Shown here: positions 4,950-62,000 of the stretch, piece by piece
Numbering within the stretch: the first letter of the stretch is position 1
Layout: every line of letters starts with the position of its first letter
Assembly (NCBI RefSeq): GCF_006345805.1
Contig: NW_021835990.1
Coordinates: 124,001 to 188,000, forward strand
DNA from: Octopus sinensis
Taxonomy: Eukaryota
Length of the DNA: 64,000 bases
Reading direction: 5' to 3'
The notes under the pieces: model-generated
Database searches by the model: none
What the model saw: only the letters and a program-made list of their open reading frames with translations
Told to the model about the DNA's origin: nothing
Made by a program: the position numbers and the translations under genes

Positions 4950-5590
4950 AATTTGATTAATTTGAAACCATTAATTCTTCATACGGACAATGGGAAGGAA
5001 TTTGTCAACGAAAGGATTTCCCGATTGTGCAATGAGTACAAGATAAAGCACGTGAGAGGTCGTGCAAGGTGCCCTTGGGTGCAGGGGCAGGTGGAAAGAC
5101 TAAACCAATCTCTGAAATATATGTTGTCCTCCACCTGTTTGTCTGAAAACCTCGATTATAAATGGATTTTGATTATAGACCGGATAACCAGTTCATATAA
5201 CTCAACGGTGCATTCCACTACGTCGTTTGCACCGTTCAGAATTATGTTTGGAGAAAATGCCGATCAGTCTGCAGACATACACTATAGCGAAAAAGAACTT
5301 AATCTCCTATTCGCAAATTTGGATTCATCCAACATAAATGAAAAAGATGACGTAGAGAATTATATGGCTTGAAAATGGTTTACCGTCAAAGACAAAAGGA
5401 CAAAATAGTAGTACAAGGACAAAGGCTGTCCAGTACTCGGATGCGGCGGAAGAAAAAATGCTAAAAAAAACATGTGGAAGAATGACACCTCTGTTTTTAA
5501 AATTGGGGAAAAAGTTGTTAGAAGAATTAAAACAAACAAAAATAAAGGGACGCGGAAGCGGTCTCTAAATGAGCACCATGATAAAAGAAT
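4950..5590 (+). mobile_element. Ginger2/Tdd-like integrase transposase fragment
   Basis: ORF 4953-5372: LHTDNGKEF...PWVQGQVERLNQ...YNSTVHSTT (integrase core, second D and E); frameshifted C-terminal tail follows. Confidence 0.8.
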
Positions 5591-16377: not shown

Positions 16378-18199
16378 CAGTGAATCCTCGCAAATTGGCC
16401 ACCTCGCAAATTGGCCAATTTTTAAATTGGCCAATTTTTTCACAATTTACTAAGAAAAAAATTAATTTTCTTAGTAAATTGGCCAATTCTCAAATTGGCC
16501 ACAATTTTTGAATTATTATTTTTTTTAATTAGAAAATAAACTATTTTTTTAATCACATGTCTTATAAAATTTCTCGTGGACGTTATACTCGGCTCACTTT
16601 TCTTGAAAAAACACAAATTATAAACTACAAGGAAGAAAATGACAATGTTTCGTGTCAGCTTCTGGCTGACAGATTCTCACATTTATTCCACAAGACGATC
16701 TCGAGAAAGACGATCAATAATCTACTGCTTAATAAAGACTCTATTTTACGGGATTCGAAAATCTATCAAAATTCGTATAAAGCTGCTCACAAACCAAAAT
16801 TTCCTACGCTTGAAGAAAAATTGATCGAATGGATGGATACAATAGAGTCTAAAGGTATTAATTGAAAACCAATTTTTAGGTGGTTTTTTGAATGATTCCT
16901 TAATATCGTGTAAGGCTGCGCATTTTGCCGAAGAGCTACAACTTAGTAACTTTAAAAATTCTAATGGATTTCTGGCAAAATTCAAAAAGAGACACGGTTT
17001 TAGAATGCTAAAATTACATGGAGAGATGCGAACAGATAAAGTAGTTGACATTAATTCTTTTCGTGAAGAATTTAAAGAAATTTCTAAATCGTATAAGCCT
17101 GATCTAATTTATAATTTGGATGAAACTGCATTATACTACAAGCTTATTCCATCGAAAAGCGTATGCAGAAACCGATTCCAAGGATACAAAAATTTTAAAG
17201 ACCGTGTGTCTATTATGCTTTGTTCAAACATGACCGGAAGTCATAAATTGAAACCTGTGATGATTGGAAAACCAAAAATGCCTAGATGTTTTAAAAATTT
17301 GACTATGGATGTCTTGTCTCATATTATAGCTCACAGAAAGCTTGGATGACTGGATCTATTTTTATTGATTGGATTATTAGCTTTGATCTCCAGCTTAAAA
17401 TTAAAAAGAAGAAAATTTTATTGCTAATAGACCACTGTCCTGCACATTCTATTCCTCAAAACTTGGATTGTATTAAGATTTTATTTTTTCCTAAAAATTC
17501 TACTGGATTACTACAACCAATGGATATTGGAATTATAAAAACCTTCAAGACTCATTTCATGAGAAGAAAGCTACAGTACTTAACTGATTTGCTGGAGACT
17601 GAAAATATTTCTGTATACAATTCATACAAAAAATTGACATTAAAAGATGCAATTTTGTTTGTTAATATGGCTTGGGATGACGTATCTACTGAAACTATTC
17701 AAAATTGTTTTAAGATTTTAAATGAATCTAATCACGAAAATACATTAATTGAACATTATGAGACTGAAATTGAAAGAACTGACATTTTCGATCCTCTAAT
17801 GAGCGAAGATTTTCTAAATATCGAAAACACAGAAGATCAAGATATAAACGAAAATTGTTTACAAGAGGATCAAGAGTCTGAAATTAGCGACGAAGAGACA
17901 AAAATCATATATCCACTCGATAGAAAAGATATTGCAAAGACATTAACTAGAATAGAAAGGCAACTTTACTGTAATGCAGAAAATGAGAATGATGTTTCGC
18001 TGATTACTGCAATAAGAAAATACAAAGAAAATGTAAAAAGAGCAAATAAAAAGGAATTAGGGATTGAATTTTATTTTAATAAAATTTAAACGTGTTTATT
18101 TTATTTTTTAAATATTGATTTTTTTCAAATTGGCCATTTTCTCAAATTGGCCATAAAATCTCTATGTACCAAAAATGGCCAATTTGCGAGGATTCACTG
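16378..18199 (+). mobile_element. pogo/Tigger DNA transposon, complete ends
   Basis: Perfect 24-bp TIR CAGTGAATCCTCGCAAATTGGCCA; TA duplication (16376-16377, 18200-18201); multiple subterminal AAATTGGCCA motifs. Confidence 0.95.
16557..18089 (+). CDS. pogo/Tigger transposase (CENP-B HTH + DDE_1) with a 25-nt intron and one 1-nt frameshift
   Basis: Splicing 16855-16879 joins ORF 16557 to ORF 16888 in frame (ESKG-GFLNDSLI). One missing T near 17300 joins YNLDETAL to AWMT...LLIDHCPAH...QPMDIGII. Confidence 0.88.
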
Positions 18200-20173: not shown

Positions 20174-22625
20174 ATAATAATCGAGACAGTCGATACAATG
20201 AGATACACGCATATTCTGAAACTACAAATTTCCACGACTGTCCCTGCCTTCTAGTGGGGCCCACGGGGACGGGGAAGAGTGTTTACATATCGGTGAGTTG
20301 TGTCGAGAATGACTGTAAGGATCTTCTATTGAATAGAATGGACAGAAATGTGTACAAACCAAACATAATCAACTTTTCTGCACAAACCTCGTCCAATCTC
20401 ACTCAGTCCATAGTCATGTCCAAACTAGACAGACGAAGGAGGGGAGTTTACGTTGGCAACAAGGCCGTAAGTCTTGCTCTGACATGGCAGATATATTTCA
20501 TAGACGACGTGAACATGCTAATGAGGGAAACATCGGGGGCACAACCACCCATAGAAGTAATCCGCCAATGGTTCGATCACGGGACTTGGTACGACCTCAA
20601 AGACTGTTCTCCAATGAAAGTGGTGGATATTCAATTCGTGTGCGCAGTGGGACCCCCAGGTAGACTGTCGGACTATATTTCTTGCTGGTGGACGTAATCC
20701 ACTCATAATATACAAGAAGGCTCGAGATTACTTACTCTCGACACCCGCTAAGAATCATTATTTGTTCAACCTGCGGGACTTTTCTCGTGTAGTCCAAGGA
20801 CTTATGCTATCCACTCCTAGAACCAACGAAGATGTCGAGTGCATATTCCGTCTGTGGGTGCACGAGGTTTGCTCTGCAATTTTTATTTAAGGTCTTCCGT
20901 GTGTACTACGACAGACTGTTTGACAACGACGATAAACAGTGAAGGAAAATTTCGAAAAAGTATTGCAAAAGTCATTCAACGAGACTGGCGGCCTTCATTG
21001 CCGACTACGATGTCTTCCAAGTCGAAATCTCCAACAGCTACAGTTCAGTTGAGTGGCGAGAGGATCTCAAACGAATTCTCCGAAAGGTCAGCGACTCGGA
21101 TAATCCCGGGGTTTTCTTATTTGCGGATACTCTAGTGAGTGGGCAAGTTGATTACTCTCAGATCAAGCAGGAATCGTTTTTGGAGGACGTGAACAATTTC
21201 CTCAACTCGGGAGAAGTCCCCAATTTATACCTTGCAGACGAGAAACAGGAGATTTGTGAGAAAATGCGTCAAATAGACAGGTTTCCGTCGTGATGGACTT
21301 GACTAGACGGAGAGACAAATCTAAGCAAATTAACTTTTTTATTTAACTTTTTATTCAAAACTGTCGGGACCAACTTCATGTTGTCCTCGCGATGAGTCCA
21401 GTCGGAGAAAGTTTCCGTAATCGACTGCGAATGTTCCTCTCGCTTATCAACTGCTGCACAATCGACTGGTTTCAGGTACAACCACAAATAACTCCCAGCG
21501 TTGGCCCAACGACGCTCTGGAGGCTGTAGTTTCACGGTTTTTGGAGGACATTGAGATGACTGATTTCGTGAGGGCCTCCTGTATTGACGTCTTCCGCCAA
21601 TTTCATACCTCTGCGGAGACATTGTCGCTCAGATACTTCAGAGAACTTGAGCGTTACAACTACGTCACCTCAACCTCCTATTTGGAACTGATAAACACAA
21701 TTGCTTGACAAAAATATAAAGTGAGTGGGGTTTGTCTGATTGTTCAGTCTGGTCATGAATGCAAAGAGGCGGTACGAAGTGGGTTTGGAAAAGTTGGAGA
21801 GTGCTTCCAACGATGTCACACAAATGCAGAAACAACTAGTCGACCTCCAACCCCAACTAATCGACGCTGGGAAGCAGGTGGACGAAATGATGATTCAGAT
21901 CGAAAAAGAGTCCATCGAAGTTGCCAAAGTTGAGAGGGTGTTTATTCCCTGACATCATCCTTCGAAGGTCGTCCGAGTCGACAAGGCTGCGGCCAACGAA
22001 CAGGCTGAAGCAGCACAAAAAATAAAAGACGAGTGCGATTCTGATCTTGCATTGGCAATGCCTCATTTGAATGCCGCGCTTATGGCACTCAACACACTCA
22101 CTCAGCAGGTTTTGTCGATCAGACGAGTTTAGGACATTACAATTGTCAAGACGATGCAAAAACCCCCACAAATCATCAGACTTGTCATGGAGGCAGTCTG
22201 CGTACTCAAGAAAATAAAACCAGACCGTCTCCCCGACTCTTCTGGCAGTGGCAGGAAAATAGAGGACTATTGGGGTCCATCAAAAAGGCTCCTGAGGTTC
22301 CTTGAGGGACTCAAAAATTTTGACAAAGCATTTGTGTGATTAAACATTCTAGGATTCTATTCCGCCTGCCATAATAAAGCAGATTCGCACAAAGTACATT
22401 TCCAACCCAGACTTTGTTCCCGACAAAGTCAAGACGGCGTCTCTGGCATGTGAAGGTCTTGCCCGGTGGGTGATTGCCATGGACAAATATGACAAGTTAA
22501 GTATTGCTTTATAACTGCAGAGTTGCCAAGATCGTTGTTCCCAAAAAACTGGCTCTCCAATAGGCTGAGCAAGAATACTCGTCAGCTATGAAGCACTTGA
22601 ACAAAAAGAGATCCGAGCTGAAAAA
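20174..22625 (+). pseudogene. DNAH7: Axonemal inner-arm dynein heavy chain (DNAH7-like) relic, AAA3 to stalk
   Basis: [82 protein letters not shown] and PDFVPDKV motifs; micro-introns; TGA at 20940-20942; frameshifts and internal deletions. Confidence 0.9.
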
Positions 22626-24929: not shown

Positions 24930-26066
24930 TGCCCCAGTGGTTAGACACTTTGGTTCAGCAGGCGCAAACAATGCTATTAGTTACTTGGCTACAACTCTAG
25001 GGAGTCCAACTCGGTGAATACGTCGAATACCATAAACGGAGAAGTAAACCCAAAGGACACCAGTTCCAGTATTTGTGTGCCATATGTGGAGATAAAGCAC
25101 TCGGCTACAATTTTAATGCAGTCACCTGTGAATCCTGCAAAGCCTTTTTCAGACGCAATGCTCTCAGAAAGAAGGTAGTCCTCCATAATATGTCCTTTAG
25201 AATACTCGTTGTGCCTTCAACGGAGAGTGTGCCCTCACTCTTTTCACCCGCAAGTTCTGTCCCGCCTGTCGACTCAACAAATGTTTCAGCGTTGGAATGA
25301 AAAAGCAGTGGATTCTCAGTAAGCCGTGTTTATAATCCCCCAGCCGATGAGCAACTCAAGAAAAGACGTGTAAAAATTGAACATAAAAGAACAAATTCGC
25401 GGGAAGCAAATCAGGAAATTTCCAATTCTGTTTTGATCAGTCCACACAACTACGAATCGACATGTTCGGTGCCATTTCCCTACAACTACTGCCAAATAAC
25501 TGAACAAATGTACCCGCCTATGCAAAGACATTATTTTTTTCCGGCCGAAATGCATCGAAATATCCGGAAAAACATGTTTGATATGACTTACTTCACTTGA
25601 ATGGACTACACATACCCACAGGGAAAGGAACAAAAGGACAGCGGATTCTACGACTGTGTGTTCAGAGAGGATTTTGAGTACCCCAAGTCATTTGAGGACT
25701 TTTCGAATCACCTTGTGGTCAAATTCGCCCCCAATTACCCGTCATGTCCTCCACAGGGGAAATACTGGAGAATGCGCCCAAAATGTGTCTTTCGGAAGAG
25801 GCAGTTCAGATGCTGGAAAATATAAATTACATTTTTTACAGGTTAGTTGTGAATCTGATTTGTAGAGTGTTTGCTAACACTGATTCGATGAGTTGTCGAG
25901 TCAGACAATTCTTTCAATTTCTGTGACATTTTGACGAATATAGGAGTCTGGACATGGAAGACAGACTCAATCTGTTCAAAGTAGTGTTTGTTGGTGATCC
26001 CAGTTTTCGACAATTGTACTGCTGACGATTCGTTTGAGCATAATGTCCCAAGCATGTGGTCTATAT
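24930..26066 (+). pseudogene. Nuclear receptor, NR1J/HR96/DAF-12-like: DBD intact, LBD disrupted and interrupted by hAT
   Basis: [29 protein letters not shown], then (intron 25175-25200) the second finger CAFNGEC...[20 protein letters not shown], then intron 25319-25343. LBD-like FDEYRSLDMEDRLNLFK is preceded by an in-frame TGA. The 5' end is uncertain. Confidence 0.85.
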
Positions 26067-28245
26067 CAGTGTTTCTCAACGTTGGGCCCCAGGCCCACTT
26101 GTGGGCCTGAGAAATTTTGAAATGGGCCTGAAGATTTAATTGGGCCTGGAGTGGGCCTCAAAGAAAATATGTTAATACTAATACTAATAAATCTTTATTC
26201 GTTATTATTTTCAAATTGATTTGATTTGTTTTTAATTTAATGATATTGTCATATTTAAATTTAAATATTATAGGCCTGATTGTATAGTTCATGTCAAAAG
26301 TACACAAGGAAAAAAGGAAGACTACACGCAAATACCAGACTGATTTTTTATTACTAGGCTTCATCCCATCAAGTGCTGATTCTAAGAGGCCTGAATGTGT
26401 GGACTGTGGCTTAGTAATGACAAATGTTTCCATGAAGAAATCAAAATTGTTCGCCCATCAACAGTTGAAGCATCCTGCTTCTGTTGGAAAGGAGCGCAGC
26501 TATTTCAGGAAGAAAGTGGAGTTACGCCAAAAGAATGCTCCAAAAACTTTAGAATTCTGCTTAAAAAAAGCAAATGAGCATAATAACAAGACACTAAAAG
26601 TCAGTTATGCAGTGAGTGAACTGGTTGCTAAGGTGGGGAAGCCACATACAATTGCAGAACGTCTGGTGAAGCCAGCAATGTTGATCTGTGCTAAAGAACT
26701 GCTAGGAGAACAGGCTGCCAACATTCTACAAAAAATCCCATTGTCTAATGACACAGTGAAGAGAAGGCAAATTGAAATGGCAGAAAACCTCGAGAAACAG
26801 CTTGTGGAAAAATTAAAAGTTTCTAAGTTCTCACTACAAATTGATGAGACAACAATCAACAATTCTGCCTTATTACTTACTTATGTCCGATATATTGATG
26901 CAATGGCAATTCATGAAGAAATGTTATTTATAAAAAAGTTGATTGACACACGAAGCGACACTATATATGCGGCTGTTTACGACTATCTGTACGATAATGG
27001 GATCCCTCTGTCAAATCTGTTGCAGATTGCAACAGACGGTGCCAGCGCTATGACCGGCAAACAGAATGGCTTTGTAGCTAAATTAAAAAAAGTTGCCCCT
27101 CATATATTGGCAATTCATTGCATCATCCATCGAGAACATCTTTGTGCTAAATCTCTCAATGATGACATGGAACATGCATTGAAAGTCGCTGTTTCAACAG
27201 TGAATTTTGTCAAAGCCAATGCTTTGCATGACCGCCTATTTCAACATTTATGTGAACATGAGGACCACCAGAGACTCCTCATGCACACTGAAGTGAGATG
27301 GCTTTCCAAAGGAAATTCCCTAGTTCGTCTTGCTGAAATGTGGGATATGGTTCTTATTTTTGTTCATGACATGAAAACACAAGCTTGTAGCAAGAAGCAG
27401 AAAGATAAAGCTGAGACTTTGTTTTCAGTGATAAATAACAACGATACAAAAGCAAGGATTTTTTACCTGGCTGACTTATTCGCACATGTCAACCAACTGA
27501 ACATGACACTGCAAGGGCGAAATGCTAATCTGATAGATAGTGCTGAGAAAGTACGCTCTTTTTTGAACAAGTTATGTCTCTGGAAGATGCATCTTCAAAA
27601 AAATGAATTTGCTTATTTTTGTAATTTTGCCAAAACTGCTCCGAGCTCAGAAGTAATCGCAAGCTGCACTGACCACTTGAAATGCTTGAAAGAAGATATG
27701 ACTAGAAGATTTAAAGATATCATCGAAATGAATCCGCCTAGTTGGATTATAGATATAGCACATTTTGACGTATTAAGTGAAAAAGACATTGATCCTATTA
27801 TTGCTGGAGAACTTCTTGAACTGAAGGAGAACAAAGTATTAATGAAAAATATTGAAAGGGATGGCTTATATGGATGGATGAAAGTAGAATCGATTCATCC
27901 ATTACTCTTTGAAAAAGTTGTTCCGTTTGTACTTGGCTTTCCCACCACTTGGTTGGTTGAGACAGGATTTTCTGCAACAAACGATTTACTCACAAAAAAA
28001 CGCAATCAATTGCAGATTGAGAAGAGAGGAGACTTACGTTTGAGGTTGAACCAAGATCTGGAAATTCAACTTGACAAATTGATAGATAGACATCAAGAGC
28101 AGTGTAGTCATTGACATTTTAATAAGATTTTTTATGTTAATAAAAATACTTTTTTGTTAATCAAAGTTTTATTAAAGGCAATGGGCCTGAGATTTTATAT
28201 GACCCTGAAAATGGGCCTCAGGGAAAAAAAGGTTGAGAAACACTG
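26067..28245 (+). mobile_element. Complete hAT transposon (Buster/Charlie type)
   Basis: TIR CAGTGTTTCTCAAC at both ends; perfect 8-bp TSD GTCTATAT (26059-26066, 28246-28253); subterminal GGGCC motifs. Confidence 0.97.
26291..28114 (+). CDS. Intact 607-aa hAT transposase
   Basis: BED finger (CVDC...H....H), QIDETT, TDGASAM, HCIIH, EVRWLSKG and TTWLVETGFS; no stops or introns. Confidence 0.96.
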   Translation: MSKVHKEKRKTTRKYQTDFLLLGFIPSSADSKRPECVDCGLVMTNVSMKKSKLFAHQQLKHPASVGKERSYFRKKVELRQKNAPKTLEFCLKKANEHNNKTLKVSYAVSELVAKVGKPHTIAERLVKPAMLICAKELLGEQAANILQKIPLSNDTVKRRQIEMAENLEKQLVEKLKVSKFSLQIDETTINNSALLLTYVRYIDAMAIHEEMLFIKKLIDTRSDTIYAAVYDYLYDNGIPLSNLLQIATDGASAMTGKQNGFVAKLKKVAPHILAIHCIIHREHLCAKSLNDDMEHALKVAVSTVNFVKANALHDRLFQHLCEHEDHQRLLMHTEVRWLSKGNSLVRLAEMWDMVLIFVHDMKTQACSKKQKDKAETLFSVINNNDTKARIFYLADLFAHVNQLNMTLQGRNANLIDSAEKVRSFLNKLCLWKMHLQKNEFAYFCNFAKTAPSSEVIASCTDHLKCLKEDMTRRFKDIIEMNPPSWIIDIAHFDVLSEKDIDPIIAGELLELKENKVLMKNIERDGLYGWMKVESIHPLLFEKVVPFVLGFPTTWLVETGFSATNDLLTKKRNQLQIEKRGDLRLRLNQDLEIQLDKLIDRHQEQCSH

Positions 28246-37149: not shown

Positions 37150-37970
37150 TTTATAATAGATAAGACCAACGAAAAATCCACATGTTAATTAGCTCGATCC
37201 ATTGCATTTCGACCTCTACAACATTGTGTGCGAATATTTTTGTTATTGTTCCTTCTTCGCTATAAATGCTTTCAAATTTCTTCAACGATAGTGCTGGGTT
37301 GGTCCCATAATCTTGAAGAATCTTGACCTATTTTTACTTTACCTTGTTGCCCAATTCAAAAGCATATTTTGATTGATGTACTCCCATTTTTCGATTCATT
37401 TTTCTGTAATATAATAAATTCAAATTTGTCGGAGGAAAATTAAATTTGAATTCATTTCGATCTATAAAATAAATAATGAGAAAATAACCTTTTATATAAT
37501 GGTTTCCTTCTTTTGCAGTATCACTTTCTTCAATAATTTCGCTCTCAGTTTCTTCTTCACAAACATCAACATGCATAATTAATGGATTTCTTTGTTCTCC
37601 AGTCTCACTTTTCTCAGTAATGTTTTTTCCAAGTTTAGAAACAGTTTCTTCTTTAAAGACATCATCATGAATAATTAATGGGTTAGATCCTTTAATACCG
37701 CGGTATCTATGAAATGAAGTATCACCTAAAAAGTTTGAAAATGTGACAATTTAACCTGTAGAAGAATGTTTGGTTAAATTGTAGAAATATGCTGCCTCTT
37801 TAATATGCTTTGTCCAACATTTTTCTGAAGATTCCGACATCATTTTAGATAAGCTTCTCGTAATCGTTTGATTGAACCGTTCAACAATTCCCTGACTCCT
37901 GGGGTTATTTGGTCGGCTATGTATTTGCTGAATTTAAAATTTTTGACAAATCTCCCGTATGTAAGAATTT
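37150..37970 (-). mobile_element. Ginger2-like integrase transposase 3' half with micro-introns
   Basis: SRPNNPRSQGIVERFNQTI...YNLTKHSST; introns 37726-37755 (30 nt) and 37462-37488 (27 nt); C-terminus RKMNRKMGVHQSKY homologous to the 52-kb copy. Confidence 0.8.
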
Positions 37971-38039
37971 TTAAAAATTAGTTATTGTATTTGACAATAA
38001 ATTAACAAATTAAAAATTAAAAAAAATATTAACAGAAAA

Positions 38040-51232: not shown

Positions 51233-52168
51233 AATTAGGGCAACCAAATGCTATAAAATGCTATTAAATATAATTTAATAAAAATATCATAAATAATAAA
51301 TATGATAGTAATAAAATTATTTTGTTATATTTATTTAAATAAAAAATTTGCTATTTTTTGTTATTTTTATACAAAATGCTATTTTTTGCTATTTTTTTAT
51401 AGTCTGCTATTATTTACTATTTTTTAATTGTTATACAGTAATAAGAATAAAAAGAATTTAAAGCAAGCATGGTTTGCACTGTTCCTTTTGGAAGCTACGT
51501 TAGACTTAAAATTGCTCAAAAAGTGGAAATATTGCGTTACAAAGAAAGTAATAAGTCTGCTTCATGCCAGACGATTTGCAACAGAAAATAGATCAATTTT
51601 GTTATTAATTGATAATTGCCCATCCCATTGCCCGCCTCTTTATTTGGAAAATATTAAAATAATGTTTATTCCAAAATACAGTACAGGGTTTATTCAGCCA
51701 ATGGATCTGGACATTATAAAAACGTTCAAAGTACATTTTACAAGACGCAAATTACTTTATTCAACGGATATATATTTCGAAGATCTAACCACGATTGGAA
51801 GAAACTATTTAAAGATTAATGACTTAATTTTGAAAAGTGAAGATGAGGAATATTCGATGGAAAATGCATATGAAGAGTTAGATTCAATCATTTTTCATTC
51901 GGATCCGTGCAATATAAAAAATTATATTATAAAGAAACTATAGAAAAAACAGGGATCACATAAAACAAACGCCCCCAGGGGCGTTTGTTTAATATGTGTA
52001 AAGTTAGGGGCGTTTATTTAATATGTGTGAAGTTAGGGGCGTTTGTTTAATATGTGTTATATTGATGTTATAAAAAATTATATTATAATTTTTCCCATGT
52101 TTATTGTAGGTAGTACATACGAAACAACTTTAAGAGAACTTCTAGGAAGTGATACAATCGGGATAATA

Positions 52169-53997
52169 TGTCGCGTCCCACACGAGCTACCCATCCCATG
52201 GTGGTTACATGTCACCTGTCAATAAATAATAATGCCTGTCATGGTGACTGTCAAATTTAATAATTAATTTAATTGCATTGATTTCTAATCAATAATCGTT
52301 TCAACAATAAAAATTTATTAAAATAAAGCGTCTACGTTTTTTTAACTTGATTCATATTAACTATTTTAGACTTCCCTGAACTTGTTTTAATCTGTTAAAT
52401 AAAATAATAATAAAATAGACCTCTAGTCGATTGTTTGACAAAATTTGAACAACTTCAGCAGGTTCTCCATATGGGGATTCAAATCGGTTTAGCCTTAGGG
52501 AAGGATTTGTCCCAAAATCCTTTAGAACTCTAACCTAACAATTATTCACTAAAAATACTCCGCTCCCAATTGAAAAATCGTATTTCGATTGATGAACATT
52601 CATTTTTTTATTCATGCGTTTAAAATATGGTGAATTTAAATTAGGTGGAGAAAAATTCAATATAAAATCACTAGCATCCAAGTTGTCTAGCATATGTTAT
52701 TCAAAATTTACCTGAAACATCTAAAATATTTTCTACATCCATATCCTCTGATGATACATGATAAAAATCATCCAAACACTCACTTTCTTTGAAATTAAAA
52801 AAATTAAAAAAACTTTTATCATCATGAATGACGGTGTTTATACCAGAAACTCCTCTTAGTTTTTTAAATGGTGTTTCATTTATAGAAGAATGAATAGTCG
52901 TGTTATATGTAAAAGTGCTTCGTTTAATAAATTGGATCCAGTTTTTAGTTGATTCTTCACTCATCAGCTTTGAAAGATTTCGTGTTAAAGTTTGATTAAA
53001 TCTTTCCACGATACCCTGAAACAGATAAATATTGTGTCATTACTTGTGATTGAGGATGATTTGGTCTTCCGTAAATATGTTGGATTTTGTTTTTCGTGCA
53101 AAAAGAATCGAGATATTTATTCCTAAACTCAGTTCCATTATCTGTTTGTAGAAACTCGCAAAAGCCGATTTCTGAACAAATTTCTTCGAAAGCCTCACAA
53201 ATATCTAAATTCCAATATAAAACATAAATATACTTATTGCAGATTTATTTTTAACTCCTTTAAAAATGGCATACTTACTGTAAACATCAATGAAAGTAAA
53301 TATCCATTTGTAGCCATCGTTCGAATCGTTAAATTTTTTAACGTCTATAAGGTCTGCTTGGAATCGTTCATTTGGTCTTTTGGCAATCACATGGTACTTA
53401 GAATCTGAAACCTGCTATATAAGTTTTTTATTTTATACTTTAAGTGGAATGGAAAACTTGCATATTGAGCACTCTTTGACGACTCGTTCGATAATTTTAC
53501 GCTTTATTGTAAAATAGGAGTGTAAACATTCCTGTTTCAGTTTACGAATTCCAGAATGGCTATTCCGGTGAATAGAATCTGCAATAGTTTGCATCTCACT
53601 CTCATTATCCATGCAAATTTGTGCTTTTGAAATCTTTCGTCTTTGAGGTATAAGCAGTCATCAATGACAATAAATTTAGTGGATTTTTTAGTTAATTTAT
53701 ATTTTATTTGTCTTGAAGATGTCTGTACAGGTTGGCCATTTAAAATATTGACTATAGTATGATATTCTGAGATATTTTTTACAAAACCTATTATTACATA
53801 TACAGGGGAATACATTTTAAAGAGGACATGTTGAAAATTGAATAATAACGCTAAAAATATTAAATATGCCCACACGAGTAACGAATGATTAAACCACATT
53901 AATTATGACATCTGACAGCCAATGACCTCGTAAAAATGATTGATTGACAGGTGACATGTAGCCAGCATGGGATGCGTAACCACCATGGGACGCGACA
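52169..53997 (-). mobile_element. Complete Ginger2/Tdd-like transposon
   Basis: ~55-bp imperfect TIR starting TGTCGCGTCCCA and ending TACATGTCACCTGTCAAT; 5-bp TSD TAATA (52164-52168, 53998-54002). Removal restores the Merlin frame TIGIISFF. Confidence 0.92.
52332..53815 (-). CDS. Integrase-type transposase (HHCC + DDE) with six micro-introns and one 1-nt frameshift
   Basis: H...H.G...C..C zinc motif, FQADLID, FIDVYSKY, QTDNGTEF and SQ-GIVERFNQ. Introns: 53415-53438, 53205-53233, 53016-53043, 52687-52711, 52535-52558, 52392-52420. Frameshift near 53612. Confidence 0.88.
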
Positions 53998-55269
53998 TAA
54001 TATCATTTTTTAAGGCAAAAGGACTAATGAAATCAAAAATGATCTTGAATGTTTTTGGGTATGACCACGCTACTGTAAACCACTCAATTAACTTAATTGA
54101 ACCAACCACCGGTGTTCATACCCAACATGTGGAGTCCTATTGGAATAAAAACAAATTGCGTTGTAAGAAAATGAAAGGTGTCAAAAAAGAATTTTTACAA
54201 GACTACCTAAACGAATTTATGTGGCGTGACAACGTAATTGGTGATCCTTTTGAAAAGTTAATGGAGCTTTTGAAAAATTATTATGTTGTTCAATAAACTT
54301 GTTTCTAAAGTATAGTATTTATTTATAAATTTGATATTTAGTTTTATATTATTTTAATGTTTTCGTCGAATGTTTGACATGTATAAATTTAGGGGCGTTT
54401 GTTTAATATGTGTAAATTTAGGGGCTTTTGTTTAATATGTGTAAATTTGGGGGCGTTTGTTTAATGTGATCCAAAAAAGGAATATCTGATATTCTCCATT
54501 TTTCTAACAAGAACATTCCTTTAATAGTTTATGCTAATTTGGCAAAAAGTAGCCCAAGTTCGTCATCTGTTGAAAAATTTTCCCTTTGAAGTTTAAAATT
54601 TCGAAAAATGCTATTATTTGCTATTTTTTCTTTGGTGATTGCTATTTTTTTCAAAAATTTTGCTATTTTTTGGTTGCCCTAGTCATGACTGATAACATCG
54701 CCTAGTACCGATAATAGGAATCCCTGCTTCTCAGAAGAATCAATAATGGTTAGGTCTATATTCCGCTTTATATTATTTGTTACCACTTTGGAGTTGCTTC
54801 ATTGGTTGTTTTCAATTATAGACTCTTGCAGTCTTTTCATTTATTTCTAATTCTCGTTTAATGTGATAGGAGAGTGAAAATATTTTTTTAAAAGCAGCCG
54901 ACATACAGTCGGTCGTGCTTCAGGAGATTTCTATTTCAGTCTGATATATAATTAAAGACAATTATCCATTTTGGGTTCTCTTAATTGCTCTAAACTGGGG
55001 CGGCCAATTAGAAATGCCTCGCTAACAAATTTTATAATACTAAAGGAAATTGGCCCGAAAACAAATTTACTGACCCGTGGGACATTAGTAAAATATTTTT
55101 ATATTTATTGTGACTCAAAAGATTTTCAAGCTCGTACATTTAATGCAGATTTGACTCAGGACTATTTTATATAGAGAATAATGAAAAACATTTTTAAAAA
55201 TAATTTTAGCTTTAAAAATAATATCGTATGTACTAGTTCCTAAATTTCAAAAATAATTGCAAAACAAAT

Positions 55270-61199: not shown

Positions 61200-62000
61200 T
61201 TATTTACGTGTTTGCGTTTTTGTTAAAAATGCTGCTAAAAAATTTAGTACTAACTATTATAGATTACAAAACATTGTTTCTTATTTAAAAAGCAATACGA
61301 TTGATGAAAGTTTAATTGAAATGAACAAGTCAAGATTTCTAAATACAAAAAAAATTTTTTACTAGAAGACTCTAGATTAAAACCAAATATGGAACAAAAA
61401 ATTGTAATTGCTAAAAATTATATATAAACCATTAAATCTGAATTTTGGAATTTACATTTGAAAACGAATTATGAAGTAAACAAATTGAAAGAATAGTCTG
61501 AAAAATATTTTTTAGTATAAAAAGATCAATTATCTTAAAAGTTTATGCTGAATGTGTGGACTGTGTTCAATGTCAGTAATTAAAAGTGCATTCTCCTTTG
61601 ATAAGCATTAATGAAACAGCTCCAAAAAAGGATACTCGATGGATATGATAGATTTGAGTTTCTGGTCTGAATCGTAGTATCAAATATATTTTTAACATAA
61701 TCGATATTTATTTAAAATTTTGCTTTGTCTGAGCTACTAATTTAAGGAAAGCATTTCTAATTTCTTCTATTTTAAAAGCTTAATTTTATAATTTTTGACC
61801 TCGTCAAATATTACAGTTAGAAAACAGTAAAGACTTCAAAAATGAGAAGGAAAAGTAATTTAAACAATAGGTTTTTAATCTAGGTCAATTTTCACAAAAT
61901 CTAGTTTACAATATAGGTCAAGTGTGTAACACGATACTATGGGTAATGGAGAGAGTTCGTCACATCTAAAATGTCCTAATCGAAGGGTTAACTTAGGTTT
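61200..62000 (+). mobile_element. Highly degenerate Ginger-like integrase
   Basis: Frameshifted remnants of QMDMIDL, YIFNIIDIY and a QxDNxKxF-like motif. Confidence 0.45.

What the first reader, a model, noticed from the sequence alone, without database searches (positions are those of the whole stretch)
52169..53997. Ginger2-like transposase split by six host-sized micro-introns
Six GT-AG introns of 24, 29, 28, 25, 24 and 29 nt must be removed to give one integrase frame; several contain in-frame stops or shift the frame. Their sizes match the 21-33-nt introns of the host genes here, and the density (six in 1.5 kb) is host-like. Introns in Ginger elements are known, but conformity to an ultra-short host size points to long residence with intron shrinkage or de novo gain inside a mobile element (inference).
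Basis: partly seen in the sequence, partly recalled or inferred. Interest (0 to 1): 0.75.

Follow-up and report, generated by a model that had tools for sequence, protein, structure and literature searches.

The report
Transposon gene with six tiny introns
A 1.8-kb cut-and-paste transposon encodes a retroviral-type integrase interrupted by six 24-29-base introns, the same size as its host's own introns; the host looks like a dicyemid parasite whose DNA was assembled with an octopus genome, and the element is an ordinary kind of transposon that may be useful for studying how such tiny introns arise.

Summary
On the minus strand of 52169-53997 there are six GT...AG segments of 24, 29, 28, 25, 24 and 29 nt. 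Removing them gives a 373-aa integrase with an HHCC zinc finger and a DD35E triad. This protein aligns without gaps across five of the six junctions with uninterrupted homologues. The element has about 55-nt inverted ends (TGTCGCG...CGCGACA) and a 5-bp TAATA target duplication, and it lies inside another transposon.

The closest relatives (44% identity) are intronless 1.8-kb elements of microsporidia. The Dictyocoela muelleri one has the same 7-nt termini and also a 5-bp duplication. A tree places the family near Ginger2 and Polinton integrases, with weak deep support.

Host genes in the window (dynein, nuclear receptor) carry 24-27-nt introns. The contig belongs to the Octopus sinensis assembly but is most likely dicyemid DNA.

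- A 1-nt-type frameshift cuts off about 65 homologous N-terminal residues.
- A second, decayed relative at 37.2-38.0 kb shares one intron site, lacks two, and has one of its own.
- The nearest relatives have no introns.

Splicing itself could not be tested. This is a new member of a known kind. Interest is moderate, as a possible case of intron gain.

The parts
52164..52168 (.). Target-site duplication TAATA, left copy
   Evidence: Identical 5 bp on both flanks. Removing the element plus one 5-bp copy restores a 141-aa ORF in the surrounding IS1595/Merlin-like remnant; removing 4 or 6 bp does not.
53998..54002 (.). Target-site duplication TAATA, right copy
52169..52223 (+). Terminal inverted repeat at the 3' side of the gene. 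It starts TGTCGCG and holds two copies of a 15-nt TCCCA...TAC motif.
   Evidence: Inverted repeat I1, 69 nt, 83% complementary. Arms aligned. The 18-nt inner core occurs only at the two ends.
53943..53997 (-). Terminal inverted repeat at the 5' side of the gene, ending ...CGCGACA
53618..53815 (-). N-terminal coding segment (66 aa, MYSPVYVIIGFVKNISEYH...ERFQKHK), in a different frame from the rest
   Evidence: Aligns with the N-termini of P0001, P0002, P0003 and P0004. tblastn HSP 53788-53615. Coordinates.
53615..53620 (-). Frameshift in an aaattt run (KHK | ICMD). It is not an intron; it is either a real mutation or a homopolymer assembly error.
   Evidence: The two homologous frames overlap by 1 nt and there is no GT nearby. 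A similar 1-nt homopolymer frameshift breaks a pogo ORF at about 17340.
53439..53612 (-). Exon 1 from the internal ATG (HHCC zinc finger)
53415..53438 (-). Intron 1, 24 nt, phase 0, GTATAA...ATATAG, in-frame stops
53234..53414 (-). Exon 2 (first catalytic D, D79)
53205..53233 (-). Intron 2, 29 nt, phase 1
   Evidence: Junction KSAI|NICEAF is gap-free against homologues.
53044..53204 (-). Exon 3 (second catalytic D, D140)
53016..53043 (-). Intron 3, 28 nt, phase 0, three codons before the catalytic E
   Evidence: Junction HPQSQ|GIVERFN lies in the most conserved block and is gap-free. DD35E spacing exists only after its removal.
52712..53015 (-). Exon 4 (catalytic E176, end of core, acidic linker)
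52687..52711 (-). Intron 4, 25 nt, phase 1, in the variable linker
   Evidence: Removing it restores the frame. Homology cannot confirm it, because the region is variable.
52559..52686 (-). Exon 5
52535..52558 (-). Intron 5, 24 nt, phase 0, ends in an in-frame TAG
   Evidence: Junction GSG|VRVLKDFG is gap-free. The decayed relative at 37342-37328 is interrupted at the same site and phase.
52421..52534 (-). Exon 6 (C-terminal SH3-like region)
52392..52420 (-). Intron 6, 29 nt, phase 0
   Evidence: Junction NNRLE|IKTSSG is gap-free.
52332..52391 (-). Exon 7 with stop TAG (52334-52332)
37200..37996 (-). Decayed, 5'-truncated relative ('copy B') of the same integrase family. Its micro-interruptions are 37755-37726 (30 nt), 37488-37462 (27 nt, weak) and 37342-37328 (15 nt).
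   Evidence: tblastn hit, DNA, 43% aa identity to the element versus 37% to P0001.

Best explanation
The feature is one copy of a small (1,829-bp) Ginger2-like cut-and-paste DNA transposon. It sits inside an IS1595/Merlin-like remnant in a genome with ultra-short introns, most likely a dicyemid mesozoan whose DNA was co-assembled with its host, Octopus sinensis.

Its single gene, on the minus strand, encodes an HHCC + DD35E integrase-type transposase. The gene is interrupted by six U2-type GT-AG spliceosomal introns of 24-29 nt. The host spliceosome must remove all six to put the zinc finger, the two aspartates, the glutamate and the C-terminal SH3-like region in one frame. Retaining any of them gives a premature stop. 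The transposase would then bind the repeated 15-nt motifs in the roughly 55-nt inverted ends, cut at the TGT...ACA termini and integrate with a 5-bp staggered cut into AT-rich DNA.

Shown: the anatomy, the colinearity with intronless homologues, and the match to host intron size. Inferred: splicing, transposase activity, and the origin of the introns.

This copy also has a frameshift that cuts off the N-terminal 65 residues, so as assembled it is probably not autonomous.

The intron set is best read as acquired and turned over during a long stay in this host lineage. One site is shared with a deeply diverged local relative. Three sites differ between the two local relatives. The closest relatives elsewhere, microsporidian elements with the same termini, have none. 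I lean towards gain, at about 55:45 against ancestral introns lost elsewhere.
For: - Six GT..AG segments at the exact sizes; the spliced 373-aa ORF matches Pfam rve and rve_3, with Integrase_H2C2 just below its cut-off; HHCC and DD35E spacing.
- Gap-free alignment across junctions 1, 2, 3, 5 and 6 with uninterrupted 426-458-aa homologues. Those homologues are single ORFs at the DNA level.
- Chance of GT..AG at six fixed junctions is about 1e-13.
- Intron GC is 19.5% against 31.8% for the CDS.
- Inverted ends, TGTCG termini and a 5-bp TSD. The empty-site join restores an ORF only when 5 bp are removed.
- The D. muelleri element L003 has 213-nt TIRs, identical TGTCGCG...CGCGACA termini and a 5-bp TATTA TSD.
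- NJ tree: WINDOW + Dictyocoela 83%, family 94%, inside a Ginger2 + Polinton group and apart from Ginger1/Gypsy (reference sequences from PMC2836005).
- Host micro-introns of 24-27 nt in the dynein and nuclear receptor genes.
- The window equals VCDQ01000373.1 of GCA_006345805.1, the O. sinensis assembly.
- D. japonicum lives in O. sinensis and has 36.7% GC, 49% repeats, 6.2 introns per 1,155-bp CDS and 198-bp exons (PMC6736024). Dicyema sp. has a median intron of 27 bp (PMC6543705).
- Copy B shares intron site 5 in the same phase, lacks sites 3 and 6, and has its own 30-nt interruption.
Against: - There is no RNA evidence, so splicing is inferred.
- No other copy of the family could be retrieved, so it is unknown whether all copies carry these introns.
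- Intron 4 lies in a variable linker and is supported only by frame restoration.
- A frameshift remains after splicing.
- Deep nodes of the tree are weak: 43% for Ginger2 + Polinton + this family, and 9% for a sister relation to metazoan Ginger2.
- The protein libraries hold ORF-type predictions, so intron-bearing relatives in other animals would be invisible. This biases the picture of 'intronless relatives'.
- Microsporidia are notorious for losing introns.
- The dicyemid origin of the contig is inferred from gene structure, not from a sequence match to a Dicyema assembly.
Confidence: 0.8

Rival explanations
1. The introns are ancestral to the transposon family. They shrank together with the host's own introns, and the microsporidian and other relatives lost them. 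On this reading nothing was gained in this lineage.
For: Dicyemid host introns are described as old introns at conserved positions that shrank (Ogino 2010, cited in PMC6543705). Microsporidia have lost almost all introns (own knowledge). Ginger1 transposases carry 1-4 introns (PMC2836005). Intron loss dominates in CACTA transposases (PMC4158355). The libraries searched are biased towards uninterrupted ORFs.
Against: Every full-length relative found is uninterrupted: Dictyocoela x2, Nosema granulosis and six unnamed samples; a truncated Enteropsectra breve copy is also an uninterrupted ORF. The window element nests inside this group (83% and 94% bootstrap). The local relative B lacks introns 3 and 6 and has a different one, so turnover happened in this lineage in any case.
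Confidence: 0.35
2. The six segments are not spliced. The copy is a dead pseudogene that picked up six small insertions.
For: This copy does carry one unrelated frameshift. No transcript or second copy was found.
Against: All six start with GT and end with AG (about 1e-13 by chance). All fall within 24-29 nt, the host intron mode. All are AT-richer than the exons. The remaining 1,119 nt have no stop in 32%-GC DNA, where the out-of-frame readings show 27-63 stops per 609 codons. The catalytic spacing is exact after removal.
Confidence: 0.04
3. The segments are removed at the DNA level, like internal eliminated sequences, during the chromatin elimination reported in dicyemids, rather than by RNA splicing.
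For: From my own knowledge, not tested here: dicyemids are reported to eliminate DNA and form extrachromosomal circles during development.
Against: The boundaries are GT-AG, and the sizes equal those of introns in ordinary host genes in the same window. There are no TA-type or repeat boundaries and no similarity between the segments or to their flanks.
Confidence: 0.03
4. The gene is a domesticated host gene derived from an integrase (as GIN1, KRBA2 and SCAND3 are), which would explain its host-like intron density. On this reading it is not a mobile element.
For: Intron density and exon size match host genes: 6 introns in 1.1-1.3 kb against 6.2 per 1,155 bp. Integrase-derived host genes with introns are known (PMC2836005, PMC3575427).
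Against: It is bounded by inverted repeats with TGT...ACA termini and a 5-bp target duplication. It is inserted inside another transposon. It carries a frameshift. A second, decayed family member lies 14 kb away.
Confidence: 0.05

Closest known systems
[quoted passage not shown]
   Same: Cut-and-paste elements with 45-297-bp TIRs, TGTNR termini, an AT-rich target, and a single transposase with an H2C2 zinc finger and a DDE core with signatures such as DLID and GRP(R/N)HPQSQG-(I/V)ER. There is no canonical GPY/F motif and no YPYY motif. The 5-bp TSD matches TDD-4/5. The family falls in the same part of the integrase tree.
   Different: Much smaller (1.8 kb against 2.7-6.7 kb). The TSD is 5 bp, not the 4 bp of the metazoan Ginger2 families. 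Six micro-introns. Phylogenetic attachment to Ginger2 proper is weak (9-43% bootstrap). It forms its own well-supported family (94%) together with microsporidian elements.
Uninterrupted 'Gag-Pol polyprotein' elements of the microsporidia Dictyocoela roeselum and D. muelleri and of Nosema granulosis (P0001, P0002, P0133; locus L003)
   Same: 33-45% amino-acid identity over the whole 440-aa protein, including the N-terminus and the C-terminal domain. About 1.8-kb elements. In D. muelleri the termini are the identical TGTCGCG...CGCGACA and the TSD is a 5-bp AT-only sequence.
   Different: Those genes are single ORFs without introns. The D. muelleri TIRs are 213 nt and share only the terminal 7-8 nt. 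The hosts are fungi-related intracellular parasites with almost no introns. They are annotated as retrotransposon Gag-Pol, which their structure does not support.
Ginger1 transposases with 1-4 GT-AG introns (PMC2836005), and intron gain/loss in CACTA transposases (PMC4158355)
   Same: Integrase- or DDE-type transposase genes of DNA transposons that need host splicing. Intron content varies among related families.
   Different: The introns here are 24-29 nt, about the shortest known in animals. Density is 1 per ~190-220 nt of CDS. The family is not Ginger1: no YPYY motif, no CCGG target, and a different clade.
Dicyemid host-gene micro-introns (Ogino 2010; Lu 2019, PMC6736024; Zverkov 2019, PMC6543705; Hadjez 2026, PMC13644364)
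   Same: GT-AG boundaries, 24-29 nt (host median 27), AT-rich, about 6 per 1.1-kb CDS, exons of about 160-200 nt.
   Different: Host introns are described as ancient introns at conserved positions. Those in the transposon have no counterpart in its nearest relatives and differ between two local family members.

Membership tests
Ginger2/Tdd DNA transposons | Terminal inverted repeats of about 45-300 bp | tested here: met
   Arms of 55 nt (up to 69 nt at 83%) at 52169-52223 and 53943-53997.
Ginger2/Tdd DNA transposons | Termini follow TGTNR ... YNACA | tested here: met
   TGTCG...CGACA. The D. muelleri relative has the same 7 nt.
Ginger2/Tdd DNA transposons | TSD of 4 bp (metazoan families) or 5 bp (TDD-4/5) | tested here: met
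   5-bp TAATA. Only removal of 5 bp restores the ORF of the interrupted IS1595-like remnant. L003 has a 5-bp TATTA. This matches the TDD type, not the 4-bp metazoan type.
Ginger2/Tdd DNA transposons | AT-rich target, consensus RTATAY | tested here: inconclusive
   The target GGGA-TAATA-TCAT is AT-rich but not RTATAY, and only one insertion is available.
Ginger2/Tdd DNA transposons | Single transposase with H2C2 zinc finger and DDE core; no RT, RNase H or protease | tested here: met
   Pfam rve and rve_3 pass their cut-offs; Integrase_H2C2 (23.3 bits) is just below its 25.5-bit cut-off. The zinc-finger residues H15/H19/C48/C51 and the triad D79/D140/E176 are all present. The 1.8-kb element has room for nothing else.
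Ginger2/Tdd DNA transposons | No YPYY and no GPY/F motif (both mark Ginger1/Gypsy) | tested here: met
   No YPYY in the N-terminus. The C-terminus has SPYGEP, where relatives have SKYKD or EIYGK, so there is no conserved GPY/F.
Ginger2/Tdd DNA transposons | Integrase groups with Ginger2 integrases in a phylogeny | tested here: inconclusive
   NJ tree of 52 sequences and 225 columns. The family falls in the Ginger2 + Polinton assemblage (43% bootstrap), sister to the metazoan Ginger2 (9%), and clearly outside Ginger1/Gypsy/Copia/BEL.
U2-type spliceosomal micro-introns of dicyemids | GT...AG boundaries | tested here: met
   6 of 6.
U2-type spliceosomal micro-introns of dicyemids | Length within the host distribution (median 27 bp, two thirds under 30 bp) | tested here: met
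   24, 29, 28, 25, 24 and 29 nt. Host introns in the window are 24-27 nt. Literature values.
U2-type spliceosomal micro-introns of dicyemids | Removal restores the ORF and colinearity with intronless homologues; retention gives a premature stop | tested here: met
   Five junctions are gap-free. Intron 4 is supported by frame only. All retentions give stops or frameshifts.
U2-type spliceosomal micro-introns of dicyemids | Actually removed from the RNA | not testable with these tools
   No RNA-seq mapping tool. No spliced or unspliced product of this family is in the protein libraries.
Gypsy-type LTR retrotransposon (as the homologues are annotated, 'Gag-Pol') | LTRs in direct orientation, with gag, protease and RT/RNase H next to the integrase | tested here: not met
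   The ends are inverted, not direct. The element is 1,829 bp with only the integrase. The D. muelleri element is about 1.8 kb between 213-nt inverted repeats.
Polinton/Maverick | 15-20-kb element with protein-primed polymerase and capsid genes; integrase without the N-terminal zinc finger | tested here: not met
   1.8 kb, and an HHCC finger is present. Only the integrase core is related.
Domesticated integrase-derived host gene (GIN1, KRBA2 or SCAND3 type) | No TIRs or TSD; single-copy, syntenic and intact | tested here: not met
   TIRs and a TSD are present. It is nested in another TE and is frameshifted. A second decayed relative lies nearby.

The most novel reading that the evidence does not exclude
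The transposon entered the dicyemid lineage without introns, as its microsporidian relatives with identical termini still are. It then acquired its introns there, already at 24-29 nt, some before and some after the split of two local subfamilies. That would make it a dated, position-resolved record of de novo gain of ultra-short introns in an animal lineage whose introns are otherwise thought to be only old and shrunken. It would show that such introns can be 'born short'.
Probability: 0.4. Interest if true: 0.65.

Novelty: new member of a known kind. Interest (0 to 1): 0.42.

Why it matters
Introns in DNA-transposon genes are well known, and so are ultra-short introns in dicyemids. The finding therefore fits existing categories. 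Its value is as a natural experiment.

A mobile gene has no orthologous intron positions to inherit from the animal ancestor. Its introns therefore show what the host lineage's intron gain, loss and size constraints do to a newcomer. Here the element reaches host-like intron density and size. Its nearest relatives have no introns. Two local family members differ in intron positions.

With the full set of copies from a dicyemid genome, plus RNA-seq, one could test directly whether micro-introns arise de novo at their final size. One could also estimate the rates of gain and loss.

Two practical points follow:
- Microsporidian 'Gag-Pol' annotations of this family are Ginger-like DNA transposons.
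- A 430-kb contig of the O. sinensis reference assembly looks like parasite DNA.

Tried and rejected
1. Looking for other copies of the element:
   - The TIR core occurs only at the two ends within the window.
   - Exact-ORF look-ups of two element ORFs were not on record.
   - The word-indexed protein search gave a best hit of 44% identity.
   - A full HMMER scan of 1.84 billion representatives with exon 4 gave a best hit of 52% identity and no self-hit.
   - So neither copy number nor intron presence in other copies could be tested.
3. A de novo scan of the window for ORF-bridging GT..AG segments did not discriminate. GT-AG gave 422 candidates of 20-33 nt, against 420-621 for control dinucleotide pairs. 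Host introns were therefore established by homology instead.
4. A 28-nt gap in the dynein gene that I first read as an intron has no GT-AG placement. It coincides with a deletion of about 55 aa relative to orthologues. It was not counted.
5. A second candidate nuclear-receptor intron (25 nt at about 25319) gives a stop after removal. It was not counted.
6. TIRs were sought in the Enteropsectra and Logan relatives L005 and L006 and none was found; the copies are truncated or the contigs too short.
7. The Pfam match of the IS1595-like ORF does not extend across the empty site, so that check rests on ORF continuity alone.
8. Origin of the introns by tandem duplication or from a repeated 'introner': there is no significant similarity between the introns and their flanking exons, and no second copy of any intron in the window.
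9. Rfam and tRNA scans of the window found nothing.
10. A micro-intron explanation for the N-terminal frame change, and a 16-nt GT..AG near the start codon, were both rejected. Neither restores the frame.
Full report
**What is at the coordinates**

The stretch 52169-53997 is a discrete 1,829-bp element.
- Its two ends are inverted repeats of about 55 nt (69 nt at 83% complementarity). They begin TGTCGCG and end CGCGACA.
- An 18-nt core of the repeat occurs nowhere else in the window.
- Each arm holds two copies of a 15-nt TCCCA...TAC motif. These are plausible transposase binding sites.
- The element is flanked by a 5-bp direct duplication, TAATA.
- Joining the flanks after removing the element and exactly 5 bp restores a 141-aa ORF in the surrounding sequence. 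Removing 4 or 6 bp does not. The downstream part of that ORF matches Pfam DDE_Tnp_IS1595.
- That outer remnant has its own 25-nt inverted ends (51953-51977 and 54448-54472) and 29-nt subterminal tandem repeats. It lies next to a pogo-like DDE_1 fragment.
- So the element is a transposon insertion nested in older transposons.

**The six segments**

On the minus strand the reading frame of an integrase-like protein jumps between frames. Six GT...AG segments account exactly for the jumps and stops. They are 24, 29, 28, 25, 24 and 29 nt, at 53438-53415, 53233-53205, 53043-53016, 52711-52687, 52558-52535 and 52420-52392.
- The two segments whose length is a multiple of three carry in-frame stops. 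The others shift the frame.
- Phases are 0, 1, 0, 1, 0, 0.
- Removing them gives a 373-aa ORF (ATG 53612, stop 52334-52332). It matches Pfam rve (1.5e-12) and rve_3 above their cut-offs; Integrase_H2C2 scores just below its cut-off.
- The ORF has H15-x3-H19-x28-C48-x2-C51 and D79, D140, E176. This is the classical DD35E spacing, and it exists only after intron 3 is removed.
- The segments have 19.5% GC against 31.8% for the coding sequence.
- With local dinucleotide frequencies, GT and AG at six fixed junctions is a roughly 1e-13 event.

**Independent support from relatives**

- The spliced protein finds full-length relatives of 426-458 aa. The best are from the microsporidia Dictyocoela roeselum (44% identity, 100% coverage) and D. 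muelleri.
- A profile search adds Nosema granulosis, Enteropsectra breve and several unnamed samples.
- These proteins are encoded by uninterrupted ORFs.
- In the multiple alignment the spliced window protein runs without gaps across junctions 1, 2, 3, 5 and 6. This includes the invariant block HPQSQ|GIVERFNQT, which is split by intron 3.
- Intron 4 lies in a variable acidic linker and is supported only by frame restoration.
- The alignment also shows that about 65 residues upstream of the internal ATG are homologous (ATG 53815, MYSPVYVIIGFVKNISEYH...KHK) but sit in another frame.
- The two frames overlap by one base in an aaattt run at about 53618-53615, with no GT nearby. This is a frameshift, not a seventh intron.
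- A pogo ORF elsewhere in the window is broken by the same kind of 1-nt homopolymer change. An assembly error is therefore as likely as a real mutation.
- As assembled, this copy cannot make the full-length protein.

**What kind of element**

- The D. muelleri relative sits between 213-nt inverted repeats (98% complementary). Its terminal 7 nt are identical to those of the window element, and it is flanked by a 5-bp TATTA duplication. A Logan relative also has inverted repeats at its contig ends.
- These are therefore cut-and-paste DNA transposons, not the 'Gag-Pol' retroelements their annotation suggests.
- The defining features of Ginger2/Tdd elements are given by Bao et al. 2010 (PMC2836005): TIRs of 45-297 bp, TGTNR termini, a 4-bp TSD in animals or 5-bp in TDD-4/5, an AT-rich target, an H2C2 + DDE transposase, and no YPYY or GPY/F motif.
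- All of these are met or compatible here. The TSD is of the TDD type.
- I took reference integrase sequences from that paper's supplementary alignment and built an NJ tree of 52 sequences over 225 columns.
- In that tree the window protein groups with the Dictyocoela proteins (83%). The family is well supported (94%). It falls within the Ginger2 + Polinton assemblage (43%), next to the metazoan Ginger2 group (9%), and away from Ginger1, Gypsy, Copia and BEL.
- 'Ginger2-like' is thus a fair label, but membership by phylogeny is not firmly established.
- Ginger elements have already been reported in microsporidia (PMC5751038).

**The host**

- A 607-aa hAT ORF of the window is on record in contig VCDQ01000373.1 of GCA_006345805.1. 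The fetched locus is identical to the window over 5,824 of 5,824 bases. That assembly is Octopus sinensis (PMC10700109).
- Yet conserved genes in the window have introns that no cephalopod gene would have.
- An axonemal dynein heavy chain has GT-AG introns of 27, 24 and 25 nt. Two of these appear as exact 9- and 8-residue insertions in tblastn alignments with other animals' dyneins.
- A nuclear-receptor zinc finger is completed only by removing a 26-nt GT-AG segment.
- The dynein is at most about 64% identical to any animal dynein in the library.
- Among animals, such introns are known only in dicyemids and myxobolid myxozoans (PMC13644364).
- Dicyema japonicum lives in the renal sacs of O. 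sinensis. Its genome has 36.7% GC, 49% repeats, 6.2 introns per 1,155-bp CDS and 198-bp exons (PMC6736024). Dicyema sp. has a median intron of 27 bp (PMC6543705).
- The window (about 36% GC, mostly transposons) fits this. I conclude, by inference, that the contig is dicyemid DNA co-assembled with the octopus.

**A second family member and intron turnover**

- tblastn with the Dictyocoela protein also hits 37996-37223 on the minus strand.
- This is a decayed, 5'-truncated relative. It is 43% identical to the element over 218 residues, closer than to the Dictyocoela protein at 37%.
- It is interrupted by a 15-nt GT..AG segment with two stops. That segment lies at exactly the site and phase of intron 5 (GNK|VKILQDYG against GSG|VRVLKDFG).
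- It also has a 30-nt GT..AG segment with a stop after HSSTG, where the element has none.
- A possible 27-nt segment lies in the linker. It is in phase 1 and splits an Asp codon, as intron 4 does, but it is not required by the frame.
- The relative is uninterrupted at the sites of introns 3 and 6.
- So at least one intron predates the split of two deeply diverged local lineages, which argues for long residence. At least three sites differ between them, which argues for gain or loss within the lineage.

**Origin of the introns**

- The nearest relatives elsewhere are intronless and the window element nests among them. This favours gain after entry.
- The protein libraries contain essentially uninterrupted ORFs, and microsporidia purge introns. 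Ancestral introns lost elsewhere therefore cannot be excluded.
- I found no trace of a mechanism. The introns are unique in the window and are not similar to their flanking exons.
- I put gain at about 55:45.

**What could not be done**

- There is no way here to map RNA-seq, so splicing is inferred.
- No other copy of the family could be retrieved from any library.

**Verdict**

- The element is a new member of a known kind: a Ginger2-like DNA transposon whose gene needs host splicing, in a host already known for micro-introns.
- The additions are the extra frameshift, the intronless microsporidian relatives with identical termini, the second local relative with partly different intron positions, and the probable parasite origin of the contig.
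- Interest is moderate. It would rise if a genome-wide copy census and RNA data show that micro-introns were gained de novo inside the element.

Noticed in passing
whole window (= VCDQ01000373.1:124001-188000 of GCA_006345805.1): The contig is labelled Octopus sinensis, but its conserved genes have 24-27-nt introns and its GC and repeat content match Dicyema japonicum, a renal-sac parasite of that octopus. A 430-kb contig of the reference assembly is probably parasite DNA.
   Followed up: partly
window 37200-37996 (-): Decayed, 5'-truncated relative of the same integrase family (43% aa identity). It has GT..AG micro-interruptions of 30, 27(?) and 15 nt. One is at the same site and phase as intron 5 of the element. 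There is none at the sites of introns 3 and 6.
   Followed up: yes
window 51953-54472: The outer element that received the insertion is an IS1595/Merlin-like remnant. It has 25-nt inverted ends (96% complementary), three 29-nt tandem AGGGGCGTTTGTTTAATATGTGT... repeats inside each end, and the C-terminal part of an ISXO2-like transposase (53967-54296). It sits beside a pogo-like DDE_1 fragment (51428-51943).
   Followed up: partly
window 16888-18089 (+): A pogo-like transposase is split into two ORFs by a single-base change in a homopolymer (agaaagcttgg where AHRKAWMTG is expected). It is either decay or a long-read homopolymer error. This bears on how to read the element's own frameshift.
   Followed up: partly
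window 20233-20940 (+): The axonemal dynein heavy-chain gene lacks about 55 residues between GPPG and LIIYKKA relative to orthologues. The junction is a 28-nt segment with no GT-AG placement. This could be a non-canonical intron, a deletion, or a pseudogene.
   Followed up: partly
window 26291-28114 (+): Intact 607-aa hAT/ZBED-type transposase ORF with no introns. An identical protein is encoded on a second contig (VCDQ01001555.1). Its 90% cluster holds 22 members, including several RefSeq 'SCAN domain-containing protein 3-like' and 'ZBED8-like' proteins of O. sinensis. It is a young multi-copy family, and whether it belongs to the octopus or to the parasite is unresolved.
   Followed up: partly
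window 4953-5372 (+) and 61481-61843 (+): Two further, more distant integrase-core remnants (rve), both degenerate. The first has a large internal deletion between the first and second catalytic aspartates.
   Followed up: no
L003 (D. muelleri SDVU01000034.1), P0001, P0133: Microsporidian proteins annotated 'Gag-Pol polyprotein' are the transposases of about 1.8-kb TIR-bounded Ginger-like DNA transposons. They are not parts of retrotransposons.
   Followed up: partly
window 25073-25300 (+): Nuclear-receptor C4 zinc finger split by a 26-nt intron. A second candidate 25-nt GT..AG segment just downstream (about 25319-25343) gives a stop when removed, so the gene model there is unresolved.
   Followed up: no
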